From assembly GCF_006345805.1 (NCBI RefSeq), contig NW_021832852.1, positions 1 to 64,000 of the forward strand: 64,000 nt of DNA, given 5' to 3'. Below are positions 18,086 to 58,942 of this stretch, one piece after another; the stretch's first letter is position 1; the number at the start of each line of letters is the position of its first letter. The position numbers were made by a program, and so were the translations under genes. This DNA is from Octopus sinensis. Lineage: Eukaryota. Under the pieces are notes generated by a model. It searched no databases. It saw nothing but the letters and a program-made list of their open reading frames with translations, and was not told the DNA's origin.

Positions 18086-21000
18086 CTACATCCTGTTCTT
18101 CCATGCAGAAATGAAACTAAAATATTAAATAAAAAATCAAACTCCAATCCGATAAAAAGAGCATCATTATTTACAGCAAAACAATTAATCCCCTTGTCAC
18201 TAATTTTAAACGAGTCATTGCACTCCATCGACTCCGAATTCCACACTTTGACCACACTATTCCGACACCCACTAACAAACGCATTCTCCAAAAACGGAAT
18301 ATCGTGGACACACTGAATACTCCTTCCAGAATGTTCCAGAACATTCCTCTAGAAATATAACCATAGACATCACATTGACTATTCTTAACGAATCCCTCAC
18401 ATCCCATTTACACACACACCCGTCATGACTTACTGAGAATAGAAAACTCCCAATCACATATAGATGGACAATTCTATCATTGTGGGGAGTGCGAACAACA
18501 CATCTGGGGTGAACATCCCCAAAAGTGTCCCCTTTCACATTAAACACCTTATCAAGTTATTCTCCCAAAATATACACAAAGAGTTCGATCTTTCAAAGCA
18601 GCAATGAGATAAAGAACATCCTCAATGACCACCTCAAGCAAAAATACAATCAAAGAGTCGCACATAAATGTATTGGGACGTGCTTCCATTCTAAAATAAT
18701 GACCCAATGTGCAAACCTGGACAAATCCCAGACATTCACAACATTGGAATGAGAAGAATACAGACTTAGTCTATCCACAGATAACACACAACCAACGGCG
18801 TCGAACAAGCGTTGGGCATTTCATTAAAACTTTGTGCATTCCTGAATACACTTCCATCAGAACTGACACTCAAAATGTAAAAATAACCAAAAAATAGAAA
18901 ATTTCTTTTTAGCAGGCTCTCGAATGTCCCACACCATTGAGCAGTACGAAGCCGTCATGACCACCATCCTCAGTTCGGGGGAAAGGTTGATATTCCTCGT
19001 GACGTGGGGGTATCCACTGTAAGTCTGCACTTCACAAAACGCCTCCAAATCCCACAAATTATTCGAACAGTCTGGAATCAGTTATTGAGAGTAACCCTTG
19101 CTAGAACTCACAAGTCTATCCTGACTGGCACTCATTGACACAATTCCCCCACGTGGCCCTCTTATTTCGAACACATTCTCCAGGAATAAGGACTTGGGTC
19201 CGCTCTTTCCTTCAGAAAAGTGGGAAAACCGAGAACTAAATTTGAGGTATGGACACTACCTCTCCATCGCGTCCTTTATTTTCTGTACATCTGAGATAGA
19301 GAAAGTGTGACTGGCCGACTTGATGAACATGTGATGAGGCACAGGTACAACACTTCCACTCGACGACGTAGCAATAGTACTAAACATGCAACAACAGTTC
19401 AACCACCTGGACAAAGTGTCAATCATCGAGGGCATGGCAGTCAGTCTGTGTTTTCTTGGAATAACTTCCTAAAACTAAACCAAAATACCAACATCTTGGA
19501 CGACACCAACTTGAACTGTCCTGCAGTGTGAATCATAAGGTAATACAGTTCATTAGGATTGGTTGTGGAAGGAATGTCTCCGTCAAATTCATCCTCGGTC
19601 TCTGGGAGGAATATTAGTCACTCAACCTTCTTCATCGTCGAAATCTGGATCAGACACGTCATCTCCGAGGAAACTCAAGTCAATATTCAACTTGTCTTCG
19701 TCGTTGGGCACCAAGTCCATCAGATTGCCATACAATTCCGCCCTGAAACTACTCCGTGCGTCCAATTTGGAAATTCTCGCACGAAGTGCCTTATTATCCA
19801 CAATTGTCTTCTCCAACTGCACAATCTGTCTATTAGTCTACAACAATCAGCCTTCTCGATCATGTTCTCGAGGATATTGACCAGAATCGGCTTGATATCC
19901 TCAGAATTCTGTAAGTAATCACATAGACTGGAGGACAACTCGTCGGCAGACCCAAATTCATTCTATACTCATAATTCACTCACTCCACCTTTTTGGACAT
20001 GAAATGTGTTATCTTTGACTGACAATCCTTCACGTGACTGCTTATAAACTCAATCGTAGACTCCACCGAGGATATCTTTGTATCCAGCAAATCAGCCTTA
20101 TCCTTCTCGTCATAATTCATAACCAACTGTTTTATGAGCAGGGAGACGTGATCTCTTCTCCCTTAATGATACAAGCCGTTTTTTATATGAATTTTGTTTC
20201 TAGAAGGACTAGAATGTTCTCAAACTACCTTAACCCAACTGAACATGTCCTTTTCTATATTGTTGATTGTCACTTGATGTCCACTCATGTTGGAAATCCA
20301 ATCCTCCACTGTTTTTATGTTCTTGTCGACCAATTCCTTCAATATCTTTCTCCTATCTAAGCATAAATAACACAGTCATACTCGATTTAGTCGCCTCCAC
20401 ACTGATTAGCCTATTCTTCCTTCTCAGACTCTCAATCTAATTAGTTAATCCACCACACTCCAACATCGGCCTGCTTCCTCTTTAGCAACGAGTCTTTCTG
20501 CTCCAACCCAATTTTTAGACTTCTGTTATCAGACAATGTTCGCTGAAACTTCCTTTCGAGTTGATTGACTTCTTTGGTATGACCCACATCCCTCTGTCGA
20601 CTCCGAGTGGCTTCCTCTCTCATTTTCTTCATCATATTGACCTTAAATATATTTCACAATACACCTTTAATTTCTTCATCTCCGCCAATTCTTTCTTCAG
20701 CATTTGAAGGTCCCGCTCAGAAGTGGCAGTGATTTTGAGTTGCTGTGTCTTCTCTCGCAGTAATGACTTGTATTTCTGAACACAACTATTTAATTCTGCG
20801 ATCTTCTTCTCACATTCCTCCACTCTCTCGTTAGAACGGACATCCTTCTTGTCTATTGAGTATTACAGAGGTTAATTTACTGCTGTTTCGTCTTGATATC
20901 AAATCACGTTCTTGCTCCAAGGACTTTATTTTGCTGAGCATTGCTCCTATTTTAGTCTCGTAACAAGTCTCCATCTCTTTGCAGCGAATACGGGAGGTTT

Positions 21001-22939
21001 CAATCACTCGAATCAGCCTTTCTTTCGACTCAATCTCCTGTGCCAGACTGACCATTTGACTGGAATCAGAAATGCCGTCCACAGTCCCATCTCTCTCAAT
21101 CAACGTGTTATCTTCCTCTCTGCTCTCCATATCCTCACTTTGTCTAATAAATTAACTAATTGGCTTATTATTTACGTATCAGAACACATTCTTGTAGATT
21201 CCTCTCTTTGTCTGCGCACTGTTTGGATGAGTTGATTAATCTATTAATTCATTTAGACCACTCACATCAGTGTCGGGTGTTTTGTCATCATGTTTGAGTG
21301 ACTCCAAATCAAATATTTTATTCCTTCACATTACTCAAATGAGATTACTTGAGTGACGAGTTCTCTTCTATTAGTTCTTTTATTATAATATCCGAACAAC
21401 CCATGTCCTCCCCACCACACACTACACTCAAATCACACAACTCACCTGCCAAATATTCTTCCAGCCTATTTTTATCTGAATTGATCTGAATCTCTTCAAA
21501 ACGGGAAATATGACGACTAATTTCTAGCTTCTGTTCACTTATTTGCTGGTGAAGCTGCGAATTCTCCATTTCTAGGTCAATCAGTCTCAGTCTCATCCCA
21601 TCCGAATTCTACCAGTCCACCACAAGTCCAAATACCCCACAACTGGCCAACTCCTTCTGCAATTTCAATATTTGTGTCCGAAGAGTCATAATTTCCCGAC
21701 TATTGAGATCTTGGTTGACTGTTGCCTTATTTTCTATATTCTTTGCTCTATTTGCATATTCGACTGTCCCAGTTGTCTCAATACAGTCACGGACAGAGGG
21801 GGAAACACACGCCAACATGACAGTCCGACTATTCCCCCCAAGCGAATCCTGCAATATTCGAGTCAGCTTTGAAGTCCGATAAGGCACAAATGTCCCTGTC
21901 TTCATTTTATCAGCCAAAGCTGAGATTACGTTGCCCAATGCAAACTAGAGTCCTCCAAACACACCAAACCAGTCCACAATTTATAGAAATCCCCTCCTTT
22001 GCCCTCTCTCCGGTCGCACCAGTCCTTTTTAGTCGTTCTGACCCAGCAAGATCCACAAAATTAAATTTAGATGTGAGAATCTCCTTGTGTGACTCACCCT
22101 GATCCAATCAGACTAATTAATCAACTTTTTCCAACTCAATGACTTTCTCTTGGTTAATTAAAATAGAAAATATTGCATGAGAACGAGAAGATTGGTTGTT
22201 CATGTTAGTACTTCCTGTCGTTCTCTGATCACAACCCATTCTGAGTTGGTTTGTCACTTGTTCCAAGTCAGTCACCACCTTCATGGTTGCCCCCACCAAA
22301 TATATTCCTCCCTGGGAATCCTCGTGGATTTTTATTTGACTTTTATTCTACGATATGACCATTTTGGACTACTTTTGTGCCAATGTCCAACAAATCTCTG
22401 ATTTCCTCGTTGTAAATCTGCCAATTTGAACTGACCTGACAAACCTCGACAAATTGGATGGACAGTTTGAATTCTGACTCAGAACGTGCTTTAATCCCCG
22501 AAAATAAATGAGAAAGAGCACGAGGAATTATCCCCACTTGGTCTTCCTTCAAATCCACGTTGAATGACGAGCCCATCGAGAAAGTCTTCCCAGAACCGGT
22601 CTAAAGTAGAAAGGAGTTATAAAACCTGTCCATATGCGAGGATTGTGGCATTGTAGCCTTCGAAGGACCTACAATTAGATAGGGAAATACCCTTCCACTA
22701 AATTGTGGGCGATTGAGGAATAGATTTGAGATTGGTTGGATTTGACCCCAAAAACGTGGTCGAAAGTGAAATATTTATTGCCTCCCAACAATATTTGGGA
22801 GGTCTCAGGTAGGACTTTAGTGTAGTAGGGATATTCCTCACATAACTCACTCCCGGTGAGAGGACGGACACTGGTGGTGATTGAAATTTATTTACCGAAT
22901 GGCCACCTTAACTTTCGAATTCTCGTTCAATTTATTCAT
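18086..22939 (-). CDS. KIF21: Kinesin-4 family KIF21A/B-like motor (motor domain, coiled coil, C-terminal WD40); many tiny introns
   Basis: [15 protein letters not shown]|VRPL...FTFDHVF...EG|[14 protein letters not shown]|[11 protein letters not shown] (P-loop), [47 protein letters not shown]; coiled coils; WD40 pieces ([56 protein letters not shown]). Motor plus WD40 is the KIF21 architecture. Confidence 0.9.
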
Positions 22940-23281: not shown

Positions 23282-24785
<1,504 letters not shown>

Positions 24786-26795: not shown

Positions 26796-27058
26796 TTAGA
26801 CATTTTTATCACGATTTGTTTGCCAAATAAAGATCCTGCTCATATTGACTTCCAGAATAGTCTTCTGGTCCTGAATATAGTTGAGTCGATCATCTAACTT
26901 GCAAATCTGTCTGAGTGCTTCCTTATAATTTTTGTCTAAAAATGCTTCTGCCTCATCCAACTCATATTCCATCAATATATTCGCCTGCATCCTTTATAAC
27001 ACATTTATACTCCCAGCAGTAAATACACACTCGATACTGATTCTATTCGAGCCTTTGA
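26796..27058 (-). pseudogene. VBP1: 5'-truncated DNA-level duplicate of prefoldin subunit 3 (last two exons plus intron, and 3' flank back to 26603)
   Basis: 26603-27058 is nearly identical to 40651-41116 and keeps the intron gtataaatgtgttataaaggatgcag; encodes ANILMEYELDEAEAFLDKNY...ILEVNMSRIFIW. Confidence 0.85.
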
Positions 27059-29165: not shown

Positions 29166-29179
29166 ATTCGCAGATGAGA

Positions 29180-31452: not shown

Positions 31453-32921
31453 TTATTATTATTATTAGCACTGTCATAGGAACATAATGTAATTTAAACT
31501 AATTAAGTTCCCACATGTGCCACATATGAGACTATCTTTTCGGTCATAATTTTCCATGATGTGCGGTTGTATGCTATACTCCTGAGAGTATCTAGGTCGT
31601 CTCCATTTTTCAGTTGTCTTTTAACGCGTTGTAGTTCTTTTGAGATTACAATAGGTAATGTATTTCGTGGGCGTCCTCGGGACGCAGATCTTTCGTCCTT
31701 TGCGTAATATGATTCCATTGCCCAGTTAGCATAAACATCCTGGTCGAGTCTTAGAATGTGGCCCAATAGGCGCCAACGTGCTTCGGTAATGTCCACACTG
31801 ACGGGTCTGCTGTTGCAGATATTGTATAGGGTGGAGTTCTTGATTTTCTTTGGCCAGTTGATGCCAATAAGAATTCTTAACTGTCTTCTATGGAATGCAT
31901 CAAGAGATTTTGATTCAGACTCAGATATTCCCCATGTTCCTCCGTTGTACAAAAGTATGGGTTTAATAAAAGCATTGTATAATTTGGCACGTAAGGCCGT
32001 TCCAACCTCGCGGTTTCGTAGCCAAGTGGTCCGCAGTTTGTTAAGTGCAACAGTCGATAGCATCTTTCTCCTCATAATGTCTTCACTATCTCCTAAAAGA
32101 GTTCCAACTTTTTTCGAGTTTCGCCATTTTTCGTCTGTTCTATTTGCCTCCCGGTTGATTGTTACATATTCGGTTTTTTCTATGTTCACTTTTAAGAACC
32201 ATTTTTCCAGTGCCTGGGGAGCAATGTTCAGCAGTTCTTCGAGTGTCGACTTATCATGAGACAAAAAGTCTACATCGTCGGCATATATCACTTCAGTTAT
32301 TGAAGTAGTCTTCACTAGTTTTCTCAGATCTCTTAGTGCCGCTTCAAGATAGACAATGAATAGTACAGGTGATATTGAATCACCTTGGGGCGTTCCAATG
32401 CTTGTTTTGAAAGATCTTGATTGTACGGGTCCGATCTTCACCGTTAACTCGGTGTCTATAAGTAGTGCTCGAACCATTCTGATCGAGTCATTGTCAAGAA
32501 TAGTTTTGAGGATCTCCATTAGCTTGTCTCTGCGGATTGTATCAAATGCCCTGCTCATATCAATGCCCATATTGTGGTCGCCATTTTAAATTTCTGAGAT
32601 ATGGCACAGATCCATCTATGTCCCCATACTACATCTGCAGTTGATCGCCCAGGCCTGAATCCACTTTGGCTAGCCGACAGATATTCATTAACAGGGTCCT
32701 TAATACGTTCCAGTGTTACGAGCGAGAAGATTTTCCTTATTGTGTTCAAGAGTATGATTGGGCGAATGTTGTTAAGAGGACCTTGCGGCTTGTTGGGTTT
32801 TTGGAGAGGAATTAGCGTTCCTTTCCCAATAGGCGGTATGGTATTTCCATGGAACATCTCGTTCAGGAGATTTGTGATTATAGTTGAGATCTCCATTGGG
32901 GAGTACTTTATCAATTCACCG
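31453..32921 (-). mobile_element. 5'-truncated RTE/RTEX-like non-LTR retrotransposon with (TAA)5 tail and perfect 13-bp TSD
   Basis: RT motifs IRPIILLN, QSGFRPGRST, GIDMSRAFDTI, GTPQGDSISP, YADDVDF; one frameshift near 32570; TSD TTGACTAATGAAA at 31440-31452 and 32922-32934. Confidence 0.93.
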
Positions 32922-33047: not shown

Positions 33048-34076
33048 ATGGAAAATTCAACAGAAGATTGTCTAAACAATTGTTTGGAGTCTGACCAGTC
33101 AAACAAAACCTCAGACAGCCAGACTAACCTCAAAATCACATCATTCAACTACAAATCACCCCTCAGTCGGGAAGATAGGCAATTAATAATATCACATTTT
33201 AGTACTCGACATATTCTTGTAGACACACAAAACGACGGTTTATTTAATAAGATAATCTTTTAGACACAAACCTGATCCAAGTATGAGGGCATTAAGCATT
33301 TCTGTAGTCCCCAAAGCCCCTCTCCAGCTCAATATTCCGGGATTTTGACCCTCTCCACATTCCTACTCCAGAAAATGGCGATCCTTTTATAGCTTCCAGC
33401 ACAAACCTCAATTCGATAGAATTTCCCGCCATTTCTGACTTCCCGGAGCAGTCTCCTGAGGTGAATGTCCCTAAAAGGACTCTGGCAGACCAGCTTTTAG
33501 CACTGTATAAATCAACGACCCTTGAAATTATGGGTTTGGAGTTTTTTTGCCAAAAAATAGACAAATATGAGTCGGAGGTTGCGAAATGGCGAGAATCTGA
33601 GCTCAATTTGAAGAAAAACGTGGAATGTATGAAGAATGACTACACGGCACTGGAAGCCTCATTTCATAACCTCCACGACCGATTTGAGAAGGCTCGTGGT
33701 CTCCTGGTAGAGTCTGAGCAAGTTTGGGAGAGGGGTCTATTCGATAGGCTCGGTCAGAACTGGAGTCGACGAATGGCTTGTTGAACAAAGAAGTAGAAAA
33801 ACTGACAGAAAAATATAATTTGTTGTTGGAGAAGGCGCAGAATAAGCTTGAGGAGTTAGGATGGGTGTATTATGGTTGTAGGGCTAATTCGGCTATTTGT
33901 GAAATGGGCAATCAACATAGCACTGATGTGGCTGCTGTCGAGGAAAATTATCGCAAGATTGAGATGAAGAATGCCTATTTGGTGAGTTGTCTCAATGCCA
34001 AGGTTTTCTGATTTTCAAATCTCAGGAAGCCGAGTTGGCCCAAATAAAGACAATTTTTAACCAATATATGACCTAA
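33048..34076 (+). CDS. TACC: TACC-domain (transforming acidic coiled-coil) protein, multi-exon
   Basis: C-terminal coiled coil NDYTALEASFHNLHDRFEKARGLL...KYNLLLEKAQNKLE|ANSAI...AAVEENYRKIEMKNAYL...AELAQIKTIFNQYMT follows the TACC pattern DLNSVEKSLADLFRRYEK...RYQALKVHAEEKLDRANAEI...LRKEQLRVDAL. Confidence 0.72.
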
Positions 34077-34094
34077 GTTCATTCTGTTTTAAAT

Positions 34095-35035
34095 GCTTTT
34101 CTATAATTCGTTCATGTATCTTTAATGGAGAGTGGATAGCTTTTAAATACCCAAAGATTTAGTAAAGAGTCGCGGATTTGATAATGAAATTACACAAAGA
34201 ACAAAAAACTATATCAGAAGAGGGTTAGAACAAGTTTAATATTAGTAAAATTAAAAAATGTAATTATTCGGTGTCGATCATGAATTTATCATTAATGTTA
34301 ATTAATTATCATATTTAACGGCTGTTTAAAATGATTGAATATCTGAAATAAATTTTTCATTATGAATGATAAAAAGAGAATAATTATTAATCTAACTAAT
34401 TTTTTTGATTTTTGCTTTGATAAAATAGTTTGACTTGAATAAGACACAATTTCAATGGATAACTCTCAAATGCGTATTTAGTTGACTAAAAACACAATTT
34501 CATTTCAGTATCTTGCTACTAATGGGAGAGTGGATAGTTTTTAAATGCCCATTCAGTTCACTTGAATGAGACAAAATTTGTCTATTTTGTTGACCAAAAT
34601 GATACACAATTTCATTCAACTATCTTACTACTAATGGAAGAGGATAGCTCTCAATAAATGCCCATTTAGTTGACTAGAATAGCACACAAGTTGCCTATTT
34701 AGTTGACTTGAATGAGACACGATTTCATTTAAGTATTTTACTACTAATGGGAGAGGAGAGCTCTCAATAAATGCTTATATAGCTGACTTGATTGAGACAC
34801 AATTTTATTCAACTATCTTGCTTTTCTATAATTCGTTATTCGTTCATGTATCTTTAATGGAGAGTGGATAGCTCTCAATAAATGCCTATTCAGTTCACGT
34901 GAATGAGACAAAATTTTGTCTATTCAGTTCACTTCGGACTCTCCTTCCTACTCTCGATTAGTCACAACTAATGGGAGAGGATATCTCTTATGCCTATTTA
35001 ATTGACTAGAATGAGACACAATTTGTTTATTTTGT
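34095..35035. repeat. Degenerate compound tandem array, period ~110-114 bp, between the convergent TACC and WDR33 3' ends
   Basis: TAATGG(G)AGAG(T)GGATAGCTCTC cores at 34520, 34632, 34745, 34855 and 34969 plus an orphan at 34123; recurrent CTATTTAGTTGACTTGAATGAGACACAATTT modules. Confidence 0.8.
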
Positions 35036-35052
35036 TACCGAATATACAAAAA

Positions 35053-40850: not shown

Positions 40851-41485
40851 TTAGACATTTTTATCACGATTTGATTGCCAAATAAAGATCCTGCTCATAT
40901 TGACTTCCAGAATAGTCTTCTGGTCCTGAATATAGTTGAGCCGCTCATCCAACTTGGCAATCTGTCTGAGTGCTTCCTTATAGTTCTTGTCTAAAAATGC
41001 TTCTGCCTCATCCAACTCATATTCCATCATTATATTCGCCTGCATCCTTTATAACACATTTATACTCCCAGCAGTAAATACACACTCGATACTGAGCTTA
41101 TTCGAGCCTTCGAATAGACCTGACTACAAAGCAGATAACTGCACGTGAGATCCTCGTCTCCACTCAGCGTCTTTAGGTGTCTTACTGAGTCCAAGGAAGC
41201 CGTAAAGTCGGGGATTTGTTTCAGGTAACTTGATATTGAGAATCAATGATTTAAACCGAGATTTGCTTAGAGAAAAGTTTGATTCGATGTATCTGAATTT
41301 CCTGTGTAGATCTTGGAATCGTTCGAGTGCTCCTTGTGCGTCCCCTTTATTGAGTTCCATGAAGGAATCTACGTCTTCCTGGAATAAATTTGGAAATTTA
41401 TTTTTTATACCACAAATTCGGCTTTTATAAAATGATCAAAATTGTCTGGATTTTTGCTGATAGTTCCATTACCGTTTTCTGACAT
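40851..41485 (-). CDS. VBP1: Prefoldin subunit 3 (VBP1), full-length, 3 introns
   Basis: FIKAEFV|EDVDSFMEL...LERFQDLHRKFRYIESN...QIPDF...YLLCSQVYSKARI..VYLLLG|ANIMMEYELDEAEAFL...TILEVNMSRIFIW. Confidence 0.93.
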
Positions 41486-42183: not shown

Positions 42184-43113
42184 TTAAAAAAAAACTTTTC
42201 CAGAGTTATGTCGACGTTGTGGGTCATATCTTGATTGGTAAATTGAATAATCGGTTGTTTCTTGATTATTTTGTAAGGAATTTCGATAGTAGTCAAAACT
42301 GGATGCCAGCTGTATTCCGTTCTCAGGGTTGATTTGAGGAATAAAATTCGACATTTGCTGATATTGGACAAACGCGTTTGGATTGTGAGGGAATTGTCCG
42401 TTTTGGAAACTAGTTCCAAAGTTGGAATATGCTTGATAGTTAAATGGATTTTGTTGAGAGTACAAATCAGTCAATGGGGGTCTCGTAAAGTTGCCATTTT
42501 CAGGGAAATAATTTTCACTGATATTCATGCTATGACTGGATATAGGATGTGACACAACTTGATGTGTCATGTCCATAGGAATAAAATGATGGTCCTTTTT
42601 TGCCAGATTTTTGTTTTTTCTACGTGGTCTGTATTTATAGTCCGGGTAGTCTCGCATGTGGATAGTTCGAAGTCTTCTGGACTCTTCGACGAAAGGTTTT
42701 TTGTCTTCCTCGGATAACATCTTCCAATTATTTCCCAATCTTTTTGAAATTTCAGAATTATGCATTTTTGGATTTTCCGAAGACATTTTTTTACGTTGGA
42801 CTCTCGACCAGACCATAAAAGAATTCATTGGTCTCTTGATTCTATTTTTTCCATTCGAAATTGGAGCACTTTCAACGTTCTGGTCTTGCTGGTAGTTAAC
42901 AATCGAAGTTGATTGAGGATTGTTTTCAAATTTATCGGAGATTGAATTGTATTCCATTTGTGGAGCGGAGTACACTTTTTCCAAGTTATTAGAAACATTG
43001 AATTTGTAATGAGAATTATAATTTTCGTGGTATTTCTTTGATAATAAATTACCCGTTGAATCATTCTGATTGTATTCCAATTGTTGAATAGACATCAATT
43101 TATGCTGTTCCAT
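42184..43113 (-). CDS. SoxB: SoxB-group HMG-box transcription factor, intronless, 309 aa
   Basis: [37 protein letters not shown]...[15 protein letters not shown]; single uninterrupted ORF, as is typical of SoxB. Confidence 0.95.
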
Positions 43114-45657: not shown

Positions 45658-48039
45658 ATGGGGATCCTGTATCACCAAAAAATAGAAAGGCAAAAGACAT
45701 TTCTGCTGACACTAATTCTGATCTCAATATGTGTCTTATCGTTCATAACAAGACTCCACTCCGTCATAAAATTCGAAAGCATAATCCACGAATTCGACCC
45801 CTGGTTTAACTATCGTGCCACAAAAATGATGGTCGAGAACTCATTTTATGACTTTATAAACTGGTTTGACGAGTCAGCCTGGTATCCCCTGGGAAGAGAC
45901 GTCGGCGGAACAGTTTACCCAGGCATAATGAGCACATCCGGCCTCCTCCATTGGGCACTCCACTCCCTCAGCCTCCCAGTCCATATCCGTGAAGTCTGTG
46001 TATTCCTTCCTGCCTTCTACAGTGGTCTAATGGCCATCACAGCCTATTTATTTGCCTCAGAAGTGTGGAATAAATCAGCCGGGTTGATCTCCGCCTTCAT
46101 AATGAGCATAAGTAGTCCCCTTCCACTCATTTCCAGTCCCCGGATATGTTTCCCGATCAGTTGCAGGGAGTTATGACTATGAATGTATTTCAATATTTAT
46201 AATCATGTTTACTCTGTATCTGTGGGCCAGGACTGTCAAGTCTGGGAGTCTCCTTTGGGCAGTTTTTACTGCTTTTTTCTACTTATATGCAGTTGGTGGA
46301 GGTTTATTGACTTGTAGGTGGCTTCCTGGGGAGGATATATTTATGTAATCAACGTCATCCCTCTCCATGTATTCATACTTGTTATATCTGGTCGATATAC
46401 TAGTAAATTGTTTTGTGGTTTGGTTTATACATGTTTTATTATCAGCTTATACTACTTTTTATATTCTTGGCCTACTTATGTCTATGCAGATACCTTTTGT
46501 GGGATTCCTTCCGCTCACAACCAGCGAACATATGTCTTCTCTCAGTAATATTCGTATAATATGTCAGTGGTGTTTCTACTGCTCTGTTTGGTCGGACTTT
46601 TTAAGCATTTGGGGTCACTAAGTGACTCTCGTTGGGCAGCCAAGGTGGTTTTGTTGTGTTTGGGTGTGTTTGGCCTCGTTAGTGTGTTGATGGTGGGCGT
46701 CCTTACTTATTTGGGTAGTCTTTTTGGGGGTTATTAGTGAAGGGGTTATTTCCCCTTGGACTGGCCGTCTTTATTCGTTGTTTGACACTTCCTATGCGGC
46801 CATCAACATTCCAATCATTTCTTCTGTCGCTGAACATCAGATTTCTATTTGGACGAGATATTTTATTGACTTGCATTTTATTCCGACTGTTTTTCCGATT
46901 GGAATTTGGCTGGCTTTTTCTCGTTTGAGTGATCAAATGATTCTGGTTCTCACTCTGGCTGTCACTTCTGCTTATTTTTCTGGGATGATGGTCAGACTGG
47001 TGATTATTCTGACCCCAATTTCCGCGATTGTGTCATCCTTTGCCTTGGAGTCCGTTTTCCGTAGAATTTCTCGATCCCACCGAACTGAGAAAAATTCATT
47101 TTTTTCATTCTCGATGGCCACAACTTCACTTTTTGCCGCGATTGCGTTATTTGTTGTGCACAGCACGTGGATTACTGCCGTGATGTATTCGGGGACTTCG
47201 ATCGTGCTGGAAGGAAGCGGACAGGACGGGTACTGGTCAGTCAACTATTGGCAGAGCCCACCACATTATCGACGACTACAGAGAGGCCTACTACTGGCTG
47301 GGAAGGAACACCCCAAAGGACTCCAAGATCATGTCCTGGTGGGATTACGGATACCAAATAACGGGGTTTTCTAACAGAACCACCATAGTGGATAATAATA
47401 CGTGGAATAATACTCATATTGCCACTGTACTGTTCCCTAATCAAATTAGGTGGGCAAAGCTATGGCCTCCAATGAGTCACGGGCTGCGGAAATTGCTCGG
47501 GAATTGGACGTGGATTATGTTCTGGTGGTGTTTGGGGGATATTTGGGGTATGACTCGGACGATATCGCCAAGTTTCTGTGGATGGTCCGAATATCCGAAG
47601 GGGAGTACCCTAACGAGATCCACGTGCCCAATTGCCCGATATTTTAGGAAAATGAGTATTTTGACTCGGAGGGGAACTATAACATTGGAAAGGGCGTTTC
47701 TGAGAGGATGAAGTCTTCTTTGATGTTCCGACTTTGTTACTACCGTTTTCATAACAAGCTGGTAGTATTATACATATATTAAAGACAAATGGATATGACA
47801 AGTCGAGGAGACAGATGGTTGGGCATGTAGTCAATGAGTTGACTCACATGGAGGAGGCATTTACGAGCGAGAATTGGATTGTGAGGATATATAAAGTTAA
47901 GGATCTGCCTTCTCGTGCCAGACTTACATATAAGCCGACATTTCCAATAAGTCTACCAATGTCTAGAAAAGTAGATTTGTGTGGTTGTAATGTGTAGAAT
48001 TCGAGGACCACTAAGGGGTCCATTTATGGGAGGGGGTGA
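45658..48039 (+). CDS. STT3B: Oligosaccharyltransferase catalytic subunit, STT3B-like, multi-exon
   Basis: [101 protein letters not shown]. Confidence 0.96.
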
Positions 48040-52209: not shown

Positions 52210-55200
52210 AGTGTTGTTGTGGTGCTGTTCATGTCCGTTTTTCTCGATAAGAAGAAAATGAATCCCATGGGCCCTCCTGCAGAAGTAAATTATAAAAAAG
52301 ATATGGTGGATGCAGGAACGATGTCTCTGGGGCTGGATAATGCCACAAGAGCTTATATAAACAATAACCCTACGTTTGGAAGTCGTGTTGCCAATACTAA
52401 CTTTCACACTCTTTCTGCCATTATTGAGGATGTCGATTGTGTCTCTAAGAATGAATGGGTGTCACAGGCTGTTCATGCCACCAGACAAAGACTGGGGAGA
52501 ATACCCAGAGGTGGCTGGAGTTTTATCCTTGAAAAGTTCAACGTGAAATTTTCTGAGAGTACGAGTCTAACCAGATTGAAAAATATGGCCAATCTCAAAC
52601 CAGTAGTTGGTAACAATAATGAAGCTGGTGGATCTAATAGCAAACAATTCCCAACAAGGGAACAAGTGGAAATCTCCAATTTCAGAAATTGCCTGGAAGA
52701 GATTAATTTCCAAATTAAGGAAGTTAAATCGATACCGAGAGAGGCTCGTAAGCCTACATGGAAAATTCCAAGAAAATATGTCAAAGCTGATATTTTAATG
52801 GGATTAAACTCTGCAATATATCATATTACAAAGGACGATCCACCTCGAGATATCAATGCAATTTGTGATATTTTATATGCTGCCCAGTGTGCCTACTCAG
52901 TCTTAACTAAGAAAGTTAAGCCACAGACCACATGGTTGGGAAATACCGAGGCGAAGATCTCAAAATTATCCGCAGAACTAGAACTTGTAAATTGTTACGT
53001 AAGACAGGCTCTGCCACAGTGTGAAAAACAAAATGTGATGGATATTCTATGTCGTTATGGATATAAAAAGAAGAAAAAAGGAGAGCTTTCGAGAATCGAA
53101 TCCTTACTACATGACCTAATCAGAGTTAAGAAAAAACAAATTGCTGTATATAACTCGAGGAAGGACTTCCGTAAGGACAATGTTTGCTTCGAACTAAACA
53201 GAAGAAGATTTTACAGAAACTTATCAAAGAGTAATGAAGTCACAACATACTCTTTTGACGATGAGGAGTGCATGTCGTTCTGGGAAAAAGTATGGAGCAA
53301 AAGGCGCGAAATATCCGTGTCACTGGACAATGTTAGTAAAAGAATAACCGGCAGTGAAGACATGTTGCCAGATTTAACAAATAATTACATAATGGAGATC
53401 ATTAAATATCTTCCTGACTGGAAGGCACCGGGATGTGACGGAATATATAATTTCTTCATTAAAAGACTAGAATCTCTGCATGAATTTTTATGTGTTGAAA
53501 TCAAGAAAATAATCAACGGTGATTACATGCCAGAAAACTGGTTTTATACTGGAATTACATATCTAATTCCTAAAAAGAACGATTGTGAGACCCCGAAAGA
53601 TTTACGGCCTATAACATGCATGTCGACACTTTATAAGTTAGTTACCAAGTGTGTTAATGGAAAACTGTCTGAGTTCATGGATGTATTTGGCTTAATTTCC
53701 GACAATCAACTTGGTACGAGGAGACAGTGTCAGGGTGCTAAAGAACAGGCCCTTATTAACCAATGCCTAAATAAAGAGTATGGAAATGGGCTATACTCTG
53801 CATGGATTGATGTCAAGAAGGCTTTCGATTCTGTTGACCACGACTTTCTATTTCATGTGTTGGAGTGCTCTGGGATACCTGTATGGATTGTTAACTTTGT
53901 GAAAAGGACTGTACGAATGTGGACTGTAAAGCTCCATGTTGACGGAAGGAGAATTGGTTCTGTAAAGTTGAGCCGAGGGATTTTACAAGGAGACTCGTTA
54001 TCTCCGCAACTGTTTGTTATGGTGATGGACCCACTAAGCAGGATTCTTAATGCCATGTTTCCAAAGGTTCAGATTAATCAACAGGACCCAAATATGTTGA
54101 CCTATTCTACTAATCATTTGTTCTTCATTGACGACCTAAAGATATTCGCTCTTAAAGAAGATGTAGTAATTAAAATGATGGAAGCTGTTGATGGATTCTT
54201 TAAAACTGTTGGCTTGGAGATGAATTCAGAAAAGTCTGCATCAAATGTCAAATCTTTATCTTGTTGTGAGACTTTGGAAGGAGTCAAAGGATATCGCTAC
54301 TTGGGTGTACTTGAAGATGCAGGAAGTAATGTTCTTAAGAGTAAAGTAATGGATTCTATCCTTGGAAATGTAAAGGAAAGGATAACCATGCTTTCAAAGA
54401 CGAAATTAAATGCGGTAAATTTATTCCACGCTATAAATGAACATGCCATTTCTCTATATAATTATTACATTGGACTCATTAATATTGAACCTCATGAATT
54501 TGATTGTATTGACCGTCAAATACGACAACTTCTTACGACTCTCAGACTCCATCTCAAACCTGCAAATAAAGAGAGGTTATATTTAAATCGGAAATCTCTT
54601 GGGAGAGGACTTGCTTCAGTCTCTTTCAGAAGTGAACTGATACTTTTCCAGTTCATGAAAAGTTTAGAAAGACAGTCGACAGTATGCTTACGGAGATCGG
54701 GAATCCTGCGTGTGATACAAATAAATAAATGGCATATGGCCACAATTGCAGGATTTCTCGCCTCCAAGTATGCAATTCTCGACATGGAGAATTTGGGTGT
54801 TGAATTTATCAAAGATGCTCAAAGAAAATATTTGCTTAAGAACATCAATTGTAAAATGCTACATTCGGTTCTATTCAAATGCATGGACGAACAAAATGTT
54901 GATCTAGCCACATCCTCAGAGTGGTTATCTAAAGGAAATAATGGTCCACGGAGTGAAGCATTGTACTGTCTCTTGCAGGATAGGAATTTGTTCTTCACAT
55001 CCATGGGATCTTTATGCAGTCACTGCAAAAAATGCAAGAAAACAGTTGATCATTTGGCTACGCAGTGTGGAAAGATGTTAAACAGTGATTATCTGCGGAG
55101 ACACAATGAAGTTGTGAAGTGCATTCACCTTCATTTGTGTCGAACCTACGGTATTAAGAGAGGAAGCAAATTAAAGACTCATTCTGTTCAGTCCATATTA

Positions 55201-55839
55201 TCGACGCAGAATGTTGAAATCAGAGTCGATATGTCAATCATGACGGAAACTAAAGTTCAATCCAACAAACCAGATATCTTCGTGTATGACAAAACCAAAC
55301 AAGAGATAACCTTAATTGAAGTTGGCATCACGTCACAAGATCGCCTCAAACAAGTAGAAATCGAGAAATTTCGTAAATATGATCTGCTCGCAAACGAACT
55401 TTCGATACTTTATGATGCAAAGGTAAAGATTATCCCGGTTGTCTTGACCTGGGACGGTGTTGTTTCGAGATATTTCAAAAACTATATGGACAAATTATCG
55501 ATCGAAAAAGCCACAAGAACTTATATTCAATCTGTCGTTTTAAAAAGGACTCTAGAAAGCATGGTAGTTGAACACAGACATGGAGTGAGAGTATCTGCCG
55601 AAGAATACGCCTCTGCTGCTTACCAGCTTGCAGAAGTGGCATGCTGCCGTGACACGCCGGTGAAAGATGTGAGACAAATAGAAAATCTATCTGACTGGGA
55701 GATGGAGAGTGAGAAGGAACTGGTTGCAAGCTCTTCTCCTAAAAGGAGGAGAAAGATTCCAATAAGCGGGACTGAGAATCTAAATTAAATAGTCTAGCTT
55801 AAGTTAAATTTTGTTTCTTTTAATAATAGACTAATATCA
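52210..55839 (+). mobile_element. Full-length non-LTR retrotransposon of the RLE type (R4/Dong/NeSL-like) with a 13-bp TSD
   Basis: TSD ATTGGATACTCCT at 52197-52209 and 55840-55852; single intact ORF; short AT-rich 3' UTR. Confidence 0.95.
52231..55788 (+). CDS. RT plus CCHC plus restriction-like endonuclease polyprotein (~1185 aa), no stops
   Basis: WKAPGCDGI, LRPITC, WIDVKKAFDSV, GILQGDSLSP, FFIDDLK, YRYLG; C-x2-C..TVDHLATQC..RRHNEVV; KPDIFVYD..ITLIEVG RLE motif. Confidence 0.95.
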   Translation: MSVFLDKKKMNPMGPPAEVNYKKDMVDAGTMSLGLDNATRAYINNNPTFGSRVANTNFHTLSAIIEDVDCVSKNEWVSQAVHATRQRLGRIPRGGWSFILEKFNVKFSESTSLTRLKNMANLKPVVGNNNEAGGSNSKQFPTREQVEISNFRNCLEEINFQIKEVKSIPREARKPTWKIPRKYVKADILMGLNSAIYHITKDDPPRDINAICDILYAAQCAYSVLTKKVKPQTTWLGNTEAKISKLSAELELVNCYVRQALPQCEKQNVMDILCRYGYKKKKKGELSRIESLLHDLIRVKKKQIAVYNSRKDFRKDNVCFELNRRRFYRNLSKSNEVTTYSFDDEECMSFWEKVWSKRREISVSLDNVSKRITGSEDMLPDLTNNYIMEIIKYLPDWKAPGCDGIYNFFIKRLESLHEFLCVEIKKIINGDYMPENWFYTGITYLIPKKNDCETPKDLRPITCMSTLYKLVTKCVNGKLSEFMDVFGLISDNQLGTRRQCQGAKEQALINQCLNKEYGNGLYSAWIDVKKAFDSVDHDFLFHVLECSGIPVWIVNFVKRTVRMWTVKLHVDGRRIGSVKLSRGILQGDSLSPQLFVMVMDPLSRILNAMFPKVQINQQDPNMLTYSTNHLFFIDDLKIFALKEDVVIKMMEAVDGFFKTVGLEMNSEKSASNVKSLSCCETLEGVKGYRYLGVLEDAGSNVLKSKVMDSILGNVKERITMLSKTKLNAVNLFHAINEHAISLYNYYIGLINIEPHEFDCIDRQIRQLLTTLRLHLKPANKERLYLNRKSLGRGLASVSFRSELILFQFMKSLERQSTVCLRRSGILRVIQINKWHMATIAGFLASKYAILDMENLGVEFIKDAQRKYLLKNINCKMLHSVLFKCMDEQNVDLATSSEWLSKGNNGPRSEALYCLLQDRNLFFTSMGSLCSHCKKCKKTVDHLATQCGKMLNSDYLRRHNEVVKCIHLHLCRTYGIKRGSKLKTHSVQSILSTQNVEIRVDMSIMTETKVQSNKPDIFVYDKTKQEITLIEVGITSQDRLKQVEIEKFRKYDLLANELSILYDAKVKIIPVVLTWDGVVSRYFKNYMDKLSIEKATRTYIQSVVLKRTLESMVVEHRHGVRVSAEEYASAAYQLAEVACCRDTPVKDVRQIENLSDWEMESEKELVASSSPKRRRKIPISGTENLN

Positions 55840-57020: not shown

Positions 57021-58942
57021 ATGACCTCAAATACAGCTGTGTTATTCTCTCGCATTCGCGAATTCATAAAAGATGATAAAAATTTAGAAAGGGTACCAAA
57101 TCATATTTCCACTTGTCTTCAAAATATTTTTTTTGATACGGAACTTGAAAAAAAACTTTTTGACCTTTACGAAAAGGCTCCTCAATTTGACTGTCATCCA
57201 TCAATTCCTTTCAATGGCCTTCGAAGTTATTTCTCTATTTTGGATAAGTCAATCAAACCAATCTATGACATAACCGTCGAAATATCCACAGAAAAATACA
57301 ACAGCAAAGCCCAAACAAATAATCTACGTCAGCACGTTGATATTCTAGAACAGATGCTAAAACTGGCTGATGTGATGGACCTACTTGTGTCTCCAAATAC
57401 AAGCAGCTCCAATCCTCGGCAAATGGAGCAAGTAATCGAAAAGATAAACCAAGTTGACCAAACTGTATTTTTTCGCTCAAAAATGGCATTTTTTGTAATA
57501 TTGATTGATAATTTTCGAGTTTCCAAGTGCCTTCCACAAACCTTTAAATCTCTTGGCTTCATTTTTTGTGGCCTGTCGAGTCAAAAATACGGCGACGAAA
57601 GGTAATTTTTTATCAAGTATGTTCGACATTGCAAGATTGACCAACTCCGACTATTTTCTCAGATCGAAATTTGTTTTTATTCATTTATTCACATAGATTG
57701 CTTTTTTTAATAATTTTGTGAACTTGCAGGCAGTTACTGATGTTTGGAATTTAACTGAAAAACCACTGTTTACTGTATTTCTAGTTCTTATTCAAGTTTT
57801 TTCTTAACAATTTGAATCGCCTTTCATTTAATAAATTGTTCGATGGTTTTCATTCCCCAAAAATCAATGACCTATTTTTGATACACCCTCCTGAGGGGGA
57901 TCCCGTGTCTGTCCGACTTATATCTTACAATGTTCTCTATTTGTTGTGATTTTATTAGTTTTTTGATAAAGAAAGTGTGTCGGAGAATATTTCTGACGAT
58001 TTAATAATTCACTTCCATGGGGGAGGGTTCATCGCCCATACATCTGCCAGTCACTTGGTGGTCTCTTATTTCGTATTTATAGACATATTTGACTGCGTTA
58101 AGTCGAGCTACCAATTTGCCCATTCTTTCTGTTGACTACTCGCTTGCTCCAACGGCTCCATTCCCAAAGGCGATTGATCAATGTTTCTATTCTTACAAAT
58201 GGGCCCTTGAAAATCTTAAATTTCTTGGTATGTTAAATTATATTAATAAATATAGGCACTAGAGGTCGAAAAATTATTATGTTCGGTGATAGTGCGGGTG
58301 CGAATTTGGTGTTGACAGTTGCGGCTAAAACTATAATGGAAGGTCTACGTAAGCCAGATGTGCTTTTTTGGGCATATCCTTACTTTTCACTGTCATTGAA
58401 TGCAACTCCTTCTCGTTTTCTCTCAGTTGTTGATTTTGTTGTCTCATTTTCGTCAAGTTATGCTGCTATTTCTGGTTCTTTTTATTGAAAATTTGGCAGC
58501 ATATTTGAAGGTTGATATTCGTTCCGAAAACCAGCGAGTTCCTCAATTTTCTGGTTTTGATTCGGACACTATCGATTCCATGTTGTCCAAATACAATCTG
58601 GGGTATTGGATAGGCGACGTTGCATCCAAAATTCTGGACGAGGACATTAGAAACGACCCTTGGGTCTCTCCAGCTAATTTCAGTGATGAAATACTGAGGA
58701 CATTGCCTCCTGTTAGAATATTTGTATTAAGCCCTAATAACCGAGAATAGGTGGGGAGTTATGACTCATTGTTGGATGATTCGATTTTTATGGCAAAGCG
58801 TCTTTATGATATTGGTCACAATGTTCAGCTTCGCGTCATTGACGGATTTCCTCATGGGTTTTTACACTTGTACGGAATTGCTGAAGAAATTGACACAGAA
58901 ATCAAGATTGCGTTTGACAGTTTTTCGGAATTTACTAATTAA
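57021..58942 (+). CDS. LIPE: Hormone-sensitive lipase (LIPE)-like, multi-exon
   Basis: IHFHGGGFIAHTS, VDYSLAPTAPFPKAIDQCFYSYKWA, FGDSAGANL, ATPSRFLS, DPWVSP..ILRTLPPV, DSLLDDSIFMAKRL..IDGFPHGFLHL (Ser-Asp-His triad motifs present). Confidence 0.9.

What the first reader, a model, noticed from the sequence alone, without database searches (positions are those of the whole stretch)
18086..58942. Strand-skew flip centred inside most genes: C/A-rich 5' half, G/T-rich 3' half, whatever the orientation
Approximate hand counts on the + strand: PSMC2 23401-23520 C26/G15 versus 24181-24300 G46/C9; STT3 45901-46020 C44/G23 versus 47521-47580 G22/C8; minus-strand KIF21 18361-18420 C22/G3 versus 22681-22740 G18/C7. 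TACC, WDR33, TNK2, REC8 and LIPE show the same trend by eye; SoxB is an exception. Introns follow it too (5' gtatttcactaaaatataacaaaacag versus 3' gtgttggttgaattggattatttgtag), so amino-acid usage is not the cause. On the top strand the pattern is always C/A then G/T across a gene, the same sign as a bacterial replication origin. Inference: each gene may behave as a symmetric unit, e.g. gene-centred replication initiation or gene-sized amplification (somatic DNA amplification and extrachromosomal circles have been reported in dicyemids). Opposing sense/antisense transcription-coupled mutation or R-loop effects are alternatives.
Basis: partly seen in the sequence, partly recalled or inferred. 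Interest (0 to 1): 0.72.

Follow-up and report, generated by a model that had tools for sequence, protein, structure and literature searches.

The report
5'-to-3' strand-skew ramp in genes
In many genes of this tiny-intron parasite (dicyemid-type DNA sitting in an octopus assembly), silent sites and introns run from A/C-rich in the first few hundred bases to G/T-rich in the rest, a gradient tied to the transcript that resembles one known from yeasts, not a sign of replication starting in each gene.

Summary
At third codon positions plus intron interiors, G/T lie 3' of A/C in PSMC2 (p=2e-12), WDR33 (4e-17), TNK2 (1e-12), STT3, TACC, and weakly in LIPE and KIF21. SoxB, a cilia-type gene and all transposon ORFs show nothing.

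Three parts of the description fail:
- "Whatever the orientation" is a tautology, because "C/A then G/T" is its own reverse complement.
- The flip is not centred. It lies 0.06-0.9 of the way along the coding sequence. A ramp from the ATG that saturates at 750-1000 nt fits better than relative position or a midpoint step.
- Only 14 of 24 host genes across 11 loci show it individually.

The skew starts at the ATG, ends about 200 nt past the stop, and is near zero in intergenic DNA. Its sign changes every ~0.8 kb in tandem genes. This argues against replication or gene-sized amplification.

The gradient runs purely along the keto/amino axis, meaning the two complementary transition balances shift in mirror image. 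[quoted passage not shown]

Best reading: a transcription-linked mutational asymmetry with two regimes. The mechanism is unresolved.

The parts
18086..22939 (-). KIF21-like kinesin gene (about 25 introns). The sense strand is C-rich only in the first ~300-350 nt (about 22600-22939). It is G-rich for the remaining ~4.5 kb. The T-over-A excess appears only in the last ~30%.
Evidence: Pfam Kinesin 9.6e-99 and KIF21A domains. ATG at 22939, [15 protein letters not shown]. Cumulative G-C minimum at 6% of the gene. Silent-site profile.
23282..24785 (+). PSMC2 (26S proteasome subunit 7), 430 aa, 8 introns of 23-29 nt. This is the cleanest example. Silent GC skew goes from -0.51 in the first 250 nt to +0.61, and T-A skew from -0.25 to +0.48. 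The switch lies about 360-600 nt from the ATG.
   Evidence: Exact spliced model. Pfam PRS7_OB and AAA. Silent-site AUC 0.67, p=2e-12. Introns alone: G vs C AUC 0.89, p=8e-6. Orthologue controls are flat.
33048..34076 (+). TACC-like gene. The switch lies about 475 nt from the ATG.
   Evidence: Pfam TACC_C 6.8e-5, below the curated cut-off. AUC 0.60, p=5e-4. Deciles.
35103..36693 (-). WDR33-like WD40 gene. Exon 1 (36364-36693) is strongly A/C-rich (K3 -0.45). Exons 2-4 are near neutral. The last exon (35106-35796) is G/T-rich (K3 +0.52).
   Evidence: Pfam WD40 families. AUC 0.70, p=4e-17. Fine profile and per-exon values.
36910..38280 (-). TNK2/ACK-like tyrosine kinase gene. It is A/C-rich for about 900 nt, then steps abruptly to G/T-rich at about 37340, which coincides with intron 2.
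   Evidence: Pfam PK_Tyr_Ser-Thr 4e-43. AUC 0.69, p=1e-12. Profile.
40851..41485 (-). Prefoldin subunit gene. The switch lies about 260 nt from the ATG.
   Evidence: Pfam Prefoldin 3.4e-16. Third-position G vs C AUC 0.68, p=0.006; introns 0.83, p=0.04.
42187..43113 (-). SoxB-type HMG-box gene, intronless ORF of 309 aa. It is an exception: mildly A/C-rich throughout, with no gradient.
   Evidence: Pfam HMG_box 2.3e-25. AUC 0.47, p=0.3.
45658..47997 (+). STT3 oligosaccharyltransferase gene. Exon 1 (454 nt) has K3 -0.35. The remaining ~1.85 kb is mostly positive.
   Evidence: Pfam STT3 2.7e-83. AUC 0.58, p=4e-5. Per-exon values.
57021..58942 (+). Hormone-sensitive-lipase-like gene (LIPE). The gradient is weak.
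   Evidence: Pfam Abhydrolase_3 2e-29 and HSL_N. AUC 0.55, p=0.02.
52231..55788 (+). Intact 1185-aa reverse-transcriptase ORF of a retroelement. It serves as an internal negative control and has no gradient.
   Evidence: Pfam RVT_1. AUC 0.49. Pooled 14 TE ORFs give a log-likelihood gain of 0.0.
31506..32570 (-). Reverse-transcriptase fragment ORF (355 aa). Negative control, no gradient.
   Evidence: Pfam RVT_1 3.4e-20. AUC 0.47.
34077..35102 (.). Intergenic spacer between the convergent 3' ends of TACC and WDR33. The skew falls to about zero here, although both flanking gene ends are strongly skewed.
   Evidence: The spacer contains a 113-nt tandem repeat.

Best explanation
A compositional ramp confined to the transcription unit. 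It is most likely produced by strand-asymmetric transition mutation coupled to Pol II transcription in the germ line, operating in two regimes.

In the gene body, beyond roughly 0.4-1 kb from the start, C>T and A>G changes on the sense (non-template) strand outweigh their complements. The sense strand therefore becomes G/T-rich, which is the classical transcription-associated sign. In the first few hundred nucleotides the balance is the mirror image: G>A and T>C win on the sense strand, so it becomes A/C-rich.

What is shown: the anatomy, the site classes affected, the keto/amino axis, the confinement to transcripts and the anchoring at the 5' end. What is inferred: that the cause is mutation rather than selection, that it depends on germ-line expression, and what produces the 5' regime. 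Candidates for the 5' regime are an initiation or early-elongation state of Pol II with different exposure or repair of the two strands, as McLean & Tirosh proposed for fungi, or antisense events near the promoter.
For: 1. The gradient is concentrated at silent sites. Pooled over 24 host genes, the log-likelihood gain (dLL) for the ramp is 72.6 at position 3, 9.0 at position 1 and 2.6 at position 2. Introns give 7.9.
2. In 12 responsive genes, 4-fold sites go from A.35 C.27 G.14 T.24 to A.19 C.16 G.28 T.37. Intron interiors go from A.40 C.17 G.08 T.35 to about A.27 C.12 G.18 T.43, a similar amplitude.
3. The ramp runs purely along the keto/amino axis (dLL 72.6, against 0.4 for the purine axis and 2.3 for GC content). 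The purine fraction stays near 0.49 while G/(A+G) rises from .29 to .57 and T/(C+T) from .47 to .69. That is what a change in the balance of complementary transitions predicts.
4. The skew is confined to transcripts. Keto skew is about 0 from -500 to -1, drops to -0.16 at the ATG, crosses zero near +400, stays at +0.10 to +0.19 until about 200 nt past the stop, then returns to about 0 (fine profile).
5. The ramp is anchored at the 5' end and saturates.
6. It is absent from 14 transposon ORFs (11,389 third positions, dLL 0.0), from SoxB and from a DUF4455/4456 gene. It is strong in housekeeping-type genes: proteasome, WDR33, STT3, prefoldin, a MYST acetyltransferase and condensin Cnd3. This matches a dependence on germ-line expression.
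7. The protein sequence is not the cause.
8. The same 5'-C / 3'-G pattern in fungi affects 4-fold sites and UTRs in many but not all genes (PMC3315797).
Against: - No expression, TSS or polymorphism data were available, so both 'mutational' and 'germ-line expression' are inferences.
- Known transcription-associated asymmetry in mammals keeps one sign along a gene. No established mechanism gives a mirror-image regime in the first ~0.5 kb.
- The negative zone starts at the ATG with no skew in the 500 nt upstream. That fits poorly with antisense transcripts running out through the promoter. It would also fit selection acting on the mRNA or pre-mRNA.
- Switch positions vary from 260 to about 1600 nt. 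In TNK2 and WDR33 they coincide with exon boundaries, which the model does not explain.
- Some host genes that look broadly expressed (ArfGAP, CTNNBL1-like, NSDHL, MGAT2) show nothing.
- Gene models outside the window come from my own finder, and only some were checked against Pfam.
Confidence: 0.55

Rival explanations
1. Selection acting on the RNA or on transcription kinetics. An A/C-rich 5' part would keep the 5' region of the (pre-)mRNA unstructured or would pace Pol II. A G/U-rich 3' part would avoid C, as in the adaptive CTP/C-avoidance idea of McLean & Tirosh, or would favour termination.
For: The skew starts at the ATG and ends near the likely poly(A) site, so it matches the RNA exactly. 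Introns and the 3' UTR are part of the pre-mRNA and share the skew. The adaptive hypothesis is published for fungi.
Against: C-avoidance does not predict the equally strong A-to-T shift (T vs A log-likelihood gain 35.5). Halves of complementary composition would promote long-range pairing rather than prevent structure. The amplitude in introns is similar to that at 4-fold sites, as expected for a regional mutational bias. Many genes lack the gradient.
Confidence: 0.2
2. Two single-strand-exposure processes with opposite strand targets. Transcription exposes the sense strand along the gene body. Double-strand breaks centred on promoters, followed by 5' resection, expose the template strand for some hundreds of nucleotides downstream of the promoter.
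For: It gives the right sign on the gene side. It naturally explains a mirror-image transition spectrum. The 0.3-0.9 kb length scale resembles resection tracts; that comparison rests on my own knowledge and was not tested.
Against: It predicts a G/T-rich flank upstream of promoters in the gene's orientation. The observed keto skew there is +0.01 to +0.05. Upstream of TNK2 the skew is A/C-rich, the wrong sign.
Confidence: 0.08
3. Replication initiates inside each gene, so the leading-strand G/T bias flips at an intragenic origin.
For: The sign on the top strand matches an origin, but that follows automatically from symmetry. A mirror-image transition spectrum is what a reversal of polymerase direction would give.
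Against: - The skew vanishes in intergenic DNA instead of persisting to a terminus.
- The sharp changes are the downward ones, at promoters, and the upward change is gradual. That is the opposite of origin jumps.
- The sign alternates every ~0.8-1.5 kb across tandem genes.
- The flip is not centred.
- Transposon ORFs and SoxB in the same DNA are unaffected.
Confidence: 0.04
4. Gene-sized somatic amplification or extrachromosomal circles replicate each gene as a symmetric unit.
For: Chromatin elimination, amplification and circular DNAs are reported in dicyemids (PMC6543705).
Against: - No flanking repeats or shared boundary motifs were found.
- The units are not symmetric.
- Somatic events cannot shape inherited sequence unless they also occur in the germ line.
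Confidence: 0.03
5. Amino-acid composition or translational codon selection (for example a 5' codon 'ramp') creates the gradient.
For: The negative zone begins at the ATG. Positions 1 and 2 shift slightly in the same direction.
Against: Introns and the 3' UTR share the skew. The effect is about 8-28 times stronger in log-likelihood at position 3 than at positions 1 and 2. PSMC2 orthologues with 77-78% identical protein are flat. The zone is 100-300 codons long, far beyond known initiation-proximal effects.
Confidence: 0.05

Closest known systems
[quoted passage not shown]
   Same: The coding strand is C-biased at the 5' end and G-biased at the 3' end. The bias is present at 4-fold degenerate sites and extends into the 3' UTR. 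It affects many but not all genes (33% of C. albicans genes). It is linked to the direction of transcription, and the mechanism is unresolved.
   Different: - Here the organism is an animal, judged dicyemid-type from its 22-29-nt introns.
- In fungi AT skew is flat (A>T throughout). Here A-to-T shifts as strongly as C-to-G, so the axis is amino/keto.
- In fungi the strongest C bias is in the promoter and 5' UTR, and non-degenerate positions are affected as much as 4-fold sites. Here there is no promoter skew and the effect is concentrated at silent sites.
- The silent-site amplitude here reaches about ±0.5-0.6.
Transcription-associated mutational strand asymmetry (G+T excess on the non-template strand of germ-line-expressed genes in mammals; Green et al. 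2003 and Touchon et al. 2003/2004, cited from memory and via PMC3315797)
   Same: The gene-body part has the same sign (sense strand G/T-rich), includes introns, stops at the end of the transcript and runs along the keto/amino axis.
   Different: The mammalian asymmetry does not reverse sign inside the gene and is strongest near the 5' end. Here the first ~0.3-0.9 kb has the opposite sign.
Replication-associated skew jumps (bacterial origins; mammalian N-domains)
   Same: The keto/amino axis, and a sign change from C/A to G/T when read along the top strand.
   Different: Those skews run through all sequence classes for tens of kilobases up to megabases and jump sharply upward at origins. Here the skew is confined to transcripts, spans 1-5 kb, rises gradually and resets sharply at promoters.
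Symmetric end-skews of gene-sized macronuclear chromosomes in hypotrich ciliates (Prescott & Dizick 2000; from memory, not checked here)
   Same: A unit the size of a gene whose two strands have similar composition when each is read from its 5' end.
   Different: Those are physically separate molecules capped by telomeres, with the skew in the subtelomeric ~100 nt. Here the genes lie on a 95-kb contig with no terminal repeats, and the pattern is not symmetric about the unit.

Membership tests
Fungal-type intragenic opposite GC skew (McLean & Tirosh 2011) | Coding strand C-biased at the 5' end and G-biased at the 3' end of genes | tested here: met
   Deciles and cumulative skew. Silent GC skew runs from -0.5 to -0.65 up to +0.5 to +0.6. 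Pooled G vs C log-likelihood gain 39.5.
Fungal-type intragenic opposite GC skew (McLean & Tirosh 2011) | Present at 4-fold degenerate sites, so not explained by protein selection | tested here: met
   At 4-fold sites C falls from .27 to .16 and G rises from .14 to .28. WDR33 4-fold G vs C AUC 0.77, p=2e-7.
Fungal-type intragenic opposite GC skew (McLean & Tirosh 2011) | Extends beyond the CDS into the promoter/5' UTR (strongest there) and into the 3' UTR | tested here: inconclusive
   The 3' side is met: skew persists for about 200 nt past the stop. The 5' side is not: keto skew is about 0 from -500 to -1. TSS positions are unknown.
Fungal-type intragenic opposite GC skew (McLean & Tirosh 2011) | AT skew uniform along genes | tested here: not met
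   T vs A log-likelihood gain 35.5 at third positions. The A share at 2-fold purine-ending sites falls from .74 to .43.
Fungal-type intragenic opposite GC skew (McLean & Tirosh 2011) | Affects many but not all genes | tested here: met
   14 of 24 host genes at p<0.05 and 8 of 24 after Bonferroni correction.
Classical transcription-associated strand asymmetry | G+T excess on the non-template strand, introns included, bounded by the transcript | tested here: met
   Met for the gene body beyond about 0.4-1 kb.
Classical transcription-associated strand asymmetry | Same sign along the whole transcription unit | tested here: not met
   The first ~300 nt have silent keto skew of -0.35 to -0.48 in PSMC2, WDR33, TNK2 and STT3.
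Classical transcription-associated strand asymmetry | Amplitude scales with germ-line expression | not testable with these tools
   No expression data. The only support is that affected genes look housekeeping-type and that transposon ORFs and SoxB are flat.
Replication-origin skew switch | Skew continues through intergenic DNA and all sequence classes until a terminus | tested here: not met
   The skew drops to about 0 within ~200 nt of the stop. The 34.1-35.1 kb spacer is near 0. Transposon ORFs are flat.
Replication-origin skew switch | Sharp upward jump at the origin, with spacing compatible with replicons | tested here: not met
   The rise is gradual over about 1 kb and the sharp reset is downward, at promoters. 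The sign alternates every ~0.8-1.5 kb.
Gene-sized amplified or circular units | Defined unit boundaries (terminal or flanking repeats, junction motifs) and symmetry about the unit | tested here: not met
   No recurrent flanking repeats. The midpoint model fits worst among the positional models anchored on the start or on relative position. Copy number and junction reads cannot be tested here.

The most novel reading that the evidence does not exclude
The two zones show an exact mirror image of one transition asymmetry: the purine fraction stays constant while the A<->G and C<->T balances swap. This would mean that, in the germ line of this animal, the template strand is the preferentially exposed or mutated strand over the first ~0.3-0.9 kb of expressed genes. 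Possible causes are pervasive antisense Pol II activity near the promoter, or an early-elongation state whose strand handling is inverted. If so, dicyemids would be an animal system, with silent-site amplitudes of ±0.5, in which the unexplained fungal 'opposite skew' phenomenon could be dissected mechanistically.
Probability: 0.25. Interest if true: 0.65.

Novelty: new variant of a known kind. Interest (0 to 1): 0.45.

Why it matters
The gradient strongly reshapes synonymous codon usage within single genes. For example, C-ending 2-fold codons fall from 48% to 26% and A-ending ones from 74% to 43% along a gene. This has practical consequences:
- Gene finders, codon-usage analyses and phylogenetic models that assume a stationary composition will be biased for dicyemids.
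- The pattern may help mark transcript direction and extent in a genome whose splice sites carry almost no information.

Biologically, it extends to an animal an intragenic skew reversal so far described in unicellular fungi. It also adds a second (A/T) component that points to transition asymmetry. That constrains explanations of a phenomenon that still has no mechanism.

It does not provide evidence for per-gene replication origins or for gene amplification.

Tried and rejected
- A length-only spliced-ORF chainer over-chained across stops. I replaced it with a codon log-odds and intron-penalty dynamic-programming finder. Splice sites carry almost no information beyond GT/AG.
- I looked for a dicyemid PSMC2 orthologue to test conservation of the ramp. 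The best hits were generic animals at no more than 78% identity, apart from one partial sturgeon-labelled hit flagged as a contaminant at 84% over 76% of the query. I used two of the full-length hits as negative controls instead.
- The sister contigs L001, L003 and L005 are 99.3-99.85% identical to the window over their long aligned blocks. That leaves too few differences to polarise a substitution spectrum, so I did not attempt it.
- I tested whether the flip is tied to exon boundaries. It coincides with them in TNK2 and WDR33 but not generally.
- I searched for repeats or inverted repeats flanking gene units as a signature of excision or amplification. None recurred.
- The strong top-strand C/A skew at 61-63.5 kb looked like a further example. 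It is a 94-nt tandem array, not a gene.
- 'REC8' at 38.6-40.8 kb is really degenerate RT fragments. REC8 lies at 6.2-7.95 kb.
- A literature search for dicyemid nuclear skew returned only mitochondrial papers. The two dicyemid genome papers do not mention skew, and where I searched for the terms, neither strand asymmetry (PMC6736024) nor codon usage.
- Two cited papers (Aerts 2004, Touchon 2004) are not held in the library.

Full report
**Origin of the sequence.** The window is positions 1-64000 of contig VCDQ01006441.1 (94,951 bp) of assembly GCA_006345805.1. The SoxB ORF maps to identical coordinates in that record. ORFs on this contig and on its relatives carry source names of the form "uncharacterized protein LOC… [Octopus sinensis]".

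The genes, however, have 20-32-nt GT..AG introns with modes at 22 and 25 nt, and the splice sites carry almost no information beyond GT/AG. Overall GC is 34%. Among animals, introns shorter than 30 nt are reported only from myxobolid myxozoans and Dicyema japonicum (PMC13644364). Dicyemids live in octopus kidneys. I did not find a dicyemid reference sequence to confirm this directly.

**Check of the observation.** All six hand counts are exact. The gene identities were confirmed by Pfam on spliced models: KIF21, PSMC2, TACC (weak), WDR33, TNK2, prefoldin, SOX, STT3, LIPE, a DUF4455/4456 gene and two reverse-transcriptase ORFs. The PSMC2 model is exact: 430 aa and 8 introns of 23-29 nt.

In sense orientation, most of these genes run from C/A-rich to G/T-rich. 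I tested third codon positions plus intron interiors, asking whether G/T lie further 3' than A/C (PFD).

| Gene | AUC | p |
|---|---|---|
| PSMC2 | 0.67 | 2e-12 |
| WDR33 | 0.70 | 4e-17 |
| TNK2 | 0.69 | 1e-12 |
| STT3 | 0.58 | 4e-5 |
| TACC | 0.60 | 5e-4 |
| PFD (third-position G vs C) | 0.68 | 0.006 |
| LIPE | 0.55 | 0.02 |
| KIF21 | 0.53 | 0.03 |

SoxB, the DUF4455/4456 gene and both RT ORFs show nothing. Silent GC skew is -0.5 to -0.65 in the first 250 nt and +0.5 to +0.6 near the 3' end.

Introns follow the same trend. Twelve introns within 450 nt of the ATG have mean keto skew -0.12, against +0.23 for 50 later introns (p=0.0018; per-base Fisher 4e-7).

Two PSMC2 orthologue transcripts from other eukaryotes (77-78% protein identity) are flat (AUC 0.53 and 0.52). 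The coding sequence of the window's PSMC2 alone gives AUC 0.64, p=2e-6. The protein sequence is therefore not the cause.

**What needs correcting.**
- A profile that is C/A-rich and then G/T-rich is its own reverse complement. [quoted passage not shown] is therefore the same statement as [quoted passage not shown]. It says nothing independent about replication.
- The switch is not centred. In REC8 the switch is near 0.9.
- REC8 lies at 6.2-7.95 kb, outside the stated range.

**Generality.** Using two reverse-transcriptase families as handles, I fetched ten more loci from other contigs of the same assembly (L006-L015). L011 and L012 are near-identical, so I modelled genes on nine of them. I used the same finder and checked the main host genes against Pfam.

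A MYST acetyltransferase (p=2e-7), condensin Cnd3 (6e-4), an unnamed 13-intron gene (7e-4), NitFhit, PFK2 and a formin-like gene show the ramp. NSDHL, MGAT2, a RING protein, a Scribble-like gene (not Pfam-checked), an ArfGAP and a CTNNBL1-like gene do not.

Of 24 host genes:
- 18 have AUC above 0.5;
- 14 are individually significant in the 5'-to-3' direction;
- 8 survive Bonferroni correction;
- one is weakly opposite.

Fourteen transposon ORFs (11,389 third positions) give a log-likelihood gain of 0.0.

**Shape.** In 12 responsive genes pooled by distance from the ATG, composition changes monotonically and saturates at about 1-1.5 kb.

| Site class | First 300 nt | Beyond ~1 kb |
|---|---|---|
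| 4-fold sites | A.35 C.27 G.14 T.24 | A.19 C.16 G.28 T.37 |
| Intron interiors | A.40 C.17 G.08 T.35 | about A.27 C.12 G.18 T.43 |
| C share, 2-fold pyrimidine-ending | .48 | .26 |
| A share, 2-fold purine-ending | .74 | .43 |

I compared logistic models on 17,894 silent sites of all 24 host genes.

| Model | Log-likelihood gain |
|---|---|
| Ramp from the ATG, capped at 750 nt | +79.7 |
| Ramp from the ATG, capped at 1000 nt | +78.6 |
| Relative position | +54.3 |
| Step at the midpoint | +35.2 |
| Distance to the stop | up to +24.9 |

The ranking holds within genes longer than 1.9 kb. For short genes the models cannot be separated.

**Axis.** The ramp is purely keto versus amino. At third positions the gains are 72.6 for GT vs AC, 39.5 for G vs C, 35.5 for T vs A, 0.4 for the purine axis and 2.3 for GC content. 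At 4-fold sites the purine fraction stays near 0.49, while G/(A+G) rises from .29 to .57 and T/(C+T) from .47 to .69. Both zones depart by similar amounts, in opposite directions, from strand symmetry. This is what a reversal in the balance of complementary transitions would produce.

**Extent.** In a metagene of 12 responsive genes, keto skew is about 0 from -500 to -1. It drops to -0.16 at the ATG and crosses zero near +400. It stays at +0.10 to +0.19 until about 200 nt past the stop, then returns to about 0.

Across the tandem pair TNK2 then WDR33, the sense-strand skew goes negative (about 900 nt), positive (to the TNK2 stop), about 0 in a 220-nt AT-rich spacer, negative again at the WDR33 ATG, then positive to its stop. 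It is about 0 through the 1-kb spacer that separates WDR33 from the convergent TACC gene.

**Interpretation.** The following points argue against replication forks or gene-sized replicating units:
- the skew is confined to transcription units;
- the reset at promoters is sharp and the rise within genes is gradual;
- the sign alternates on a sub-kilobase scale;
- the ramp is anchored at the 5' end;
- embedded transposon ORFs and SoxB are unaffected.

No recurrent flanking repeats were found. The long circular contigs described for Dicyema sp. have a median length of 702 bp, and the only conserved protein domains found on them were mitochondrial (PMC6543705).

Translational or amino-acid selection is excluded as the main cause by the introns, the 3' UTR, the contrast between position 3 and positions 1-2, and the orthologue control.

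That leaves a cause linked to the transcript. I favour strand-asymmetric transition mutation coupled to transcription, in two regimes (confidence about 0.55). The gene-body sign is the classical one. The mirror-image regime in the first few hundred nucleotides has no established mechanism.

I considered three sources for the 5' regime:
- An initiation or early-elongation state of Pol II, as McLean & Tirosh proposed.
- Antisense transcription near the promoter. This is weakened by the absence of skew upstream of the ATG.
- Promoter-centred breaks with resection. This gives the right sign and length scale, but the predicted upstream flank skew is absent.

Selection at the RNA level remains a serious rival (about 0.2), because the skew coincides exactly with the RNA.

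**Comparison with what is known.** The closest precedent is McLean & Tirosh 2011 (PMC3315797). In most unicellular fungi the coding strand is C-biased at the 5' end and G-biased at the 3' end. The bias is present at 4-fold sites and in UTRs. It is significant in 33% of C. albicans genes and correlates only weakly with expression. The authors offer mutational (Pol II phases) and adaptive (C-avoidance) hypotheses.

The present case differs in four ways:
- it is an animal;
- AT skew is not flat but shifts as strongly as GC skew;
- the promoter carries no skew;
- the effect is concentrated at silent sites, with large amplitude.

I found no report of nuclear strand skew in dicyemids. I therefore class this as a new variant of a known kind.

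**Limits.**
- There are no expression, TSS or polymorphism data.
- Gene models outside the window are my own, and only some were validated.
- The sample is 24 host genes, taken from neighbourhoods rich in transposons.
- The species is inferred, not demonstrated.

Noticed in passing
whole window (= VCDQ01006441.1:1-64000 of GCA_006345805.1); also L001, L003, L005, L006-L015: DNA of a tiny-intron parasite (dicyemid-type) sits in an octopus genome assembly. Its intronless ORFs are named as Octopus sinensis proteins (LOC115230029 and others). This looks like host/parasite misattribution. At least four contigs carry near-identical versions of this locus (99.3-99.85% over the long aligned blocks), probably uncollapsed haplotypes or strains.
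   Followed up: partly
window 61057-63436: Tandem array of 25.5 copies of a 94-nt unit (95% matches). Its top strand is strongly C/A-skewed (GC skew down to -0.40). It mimics a gene-scale skew block but is a satellite.
   Followed up: yes
window 34471-34802 (repeat family spans about 34430-35026): Tandem repeat with a 113-nt unit in the spacer between the convergent TACC and WDR33 genes.
   Followed up: no
window 26602-27061 vs about 40.85-41.3 kb; 26412-26602 vs 27059-27185: The prefoldin 3' part is duplicated (92.5% identity). The copy forms the C-terminus of a chimeric ORF model at 26799-28067 (-), which is G/T-rich throughout and for ~600 nt downstream. A local ~600-nt duplication lies next to it.
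   Followed up: partly
window 52231-55788: The intact 1185-aa RT ORF has its closest non-assembly relatives (35-49% identity) in small metagenomic contigs and in parasites of other kingdoms: Vairimorpha, Hamiltosporidium, Theileria equi, and a bin labelled Candidatus Riesia. This is a patchy distribution biased towards parasites, worth checking for horizontal transfer or contamination.
   Followed up: no
window 37315-37339 (TNK2 intron 2); 36345-36363 and 35797-35822 (WDR33 introns): In TNK2 the skew steps abruptly from negative to positive exactly at intron 2. In WDR33 the two transitions coincide with the ends of exon 1 and exon 4. Other genes do not show such coincidence. Unexplained.
   Followed up: partly
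window 6118-7941 (+) and 8320-8831 (+): A REC8/RAD21-type gene (N-terminus MFYIHQLL…IWIAAT) and a ubiquitin-RPS27A fusion gene. REC8 stays A/C-rich for ~1.6 kb and turns G/T-rich only in its last ~200 nt and 3' UTR. Neither was scanned against Pfam.
   Followed up: partly
window-wide, 86 training introns: Donor and acceptor sites carry almost no information outside GT and AG. Intron length is 20-32 nt, with modes at 22 and 25.
   Followed up: partly
window 39553-39614 and 41981-42042: A 62-nt inverted repeat (82% complementary) brackets the prefoldin gene and adjacent RT fragments, with 2.4 kb between the arms. It may be a pair of transposon ends.
   Followed up: no
window 38.6-40.8 kb: Degenerate reverse-transcriptase fragments on the + strand (for example 39615-40372). 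They are related to the RT fragment at 31506-32570.
   Followed up: partly
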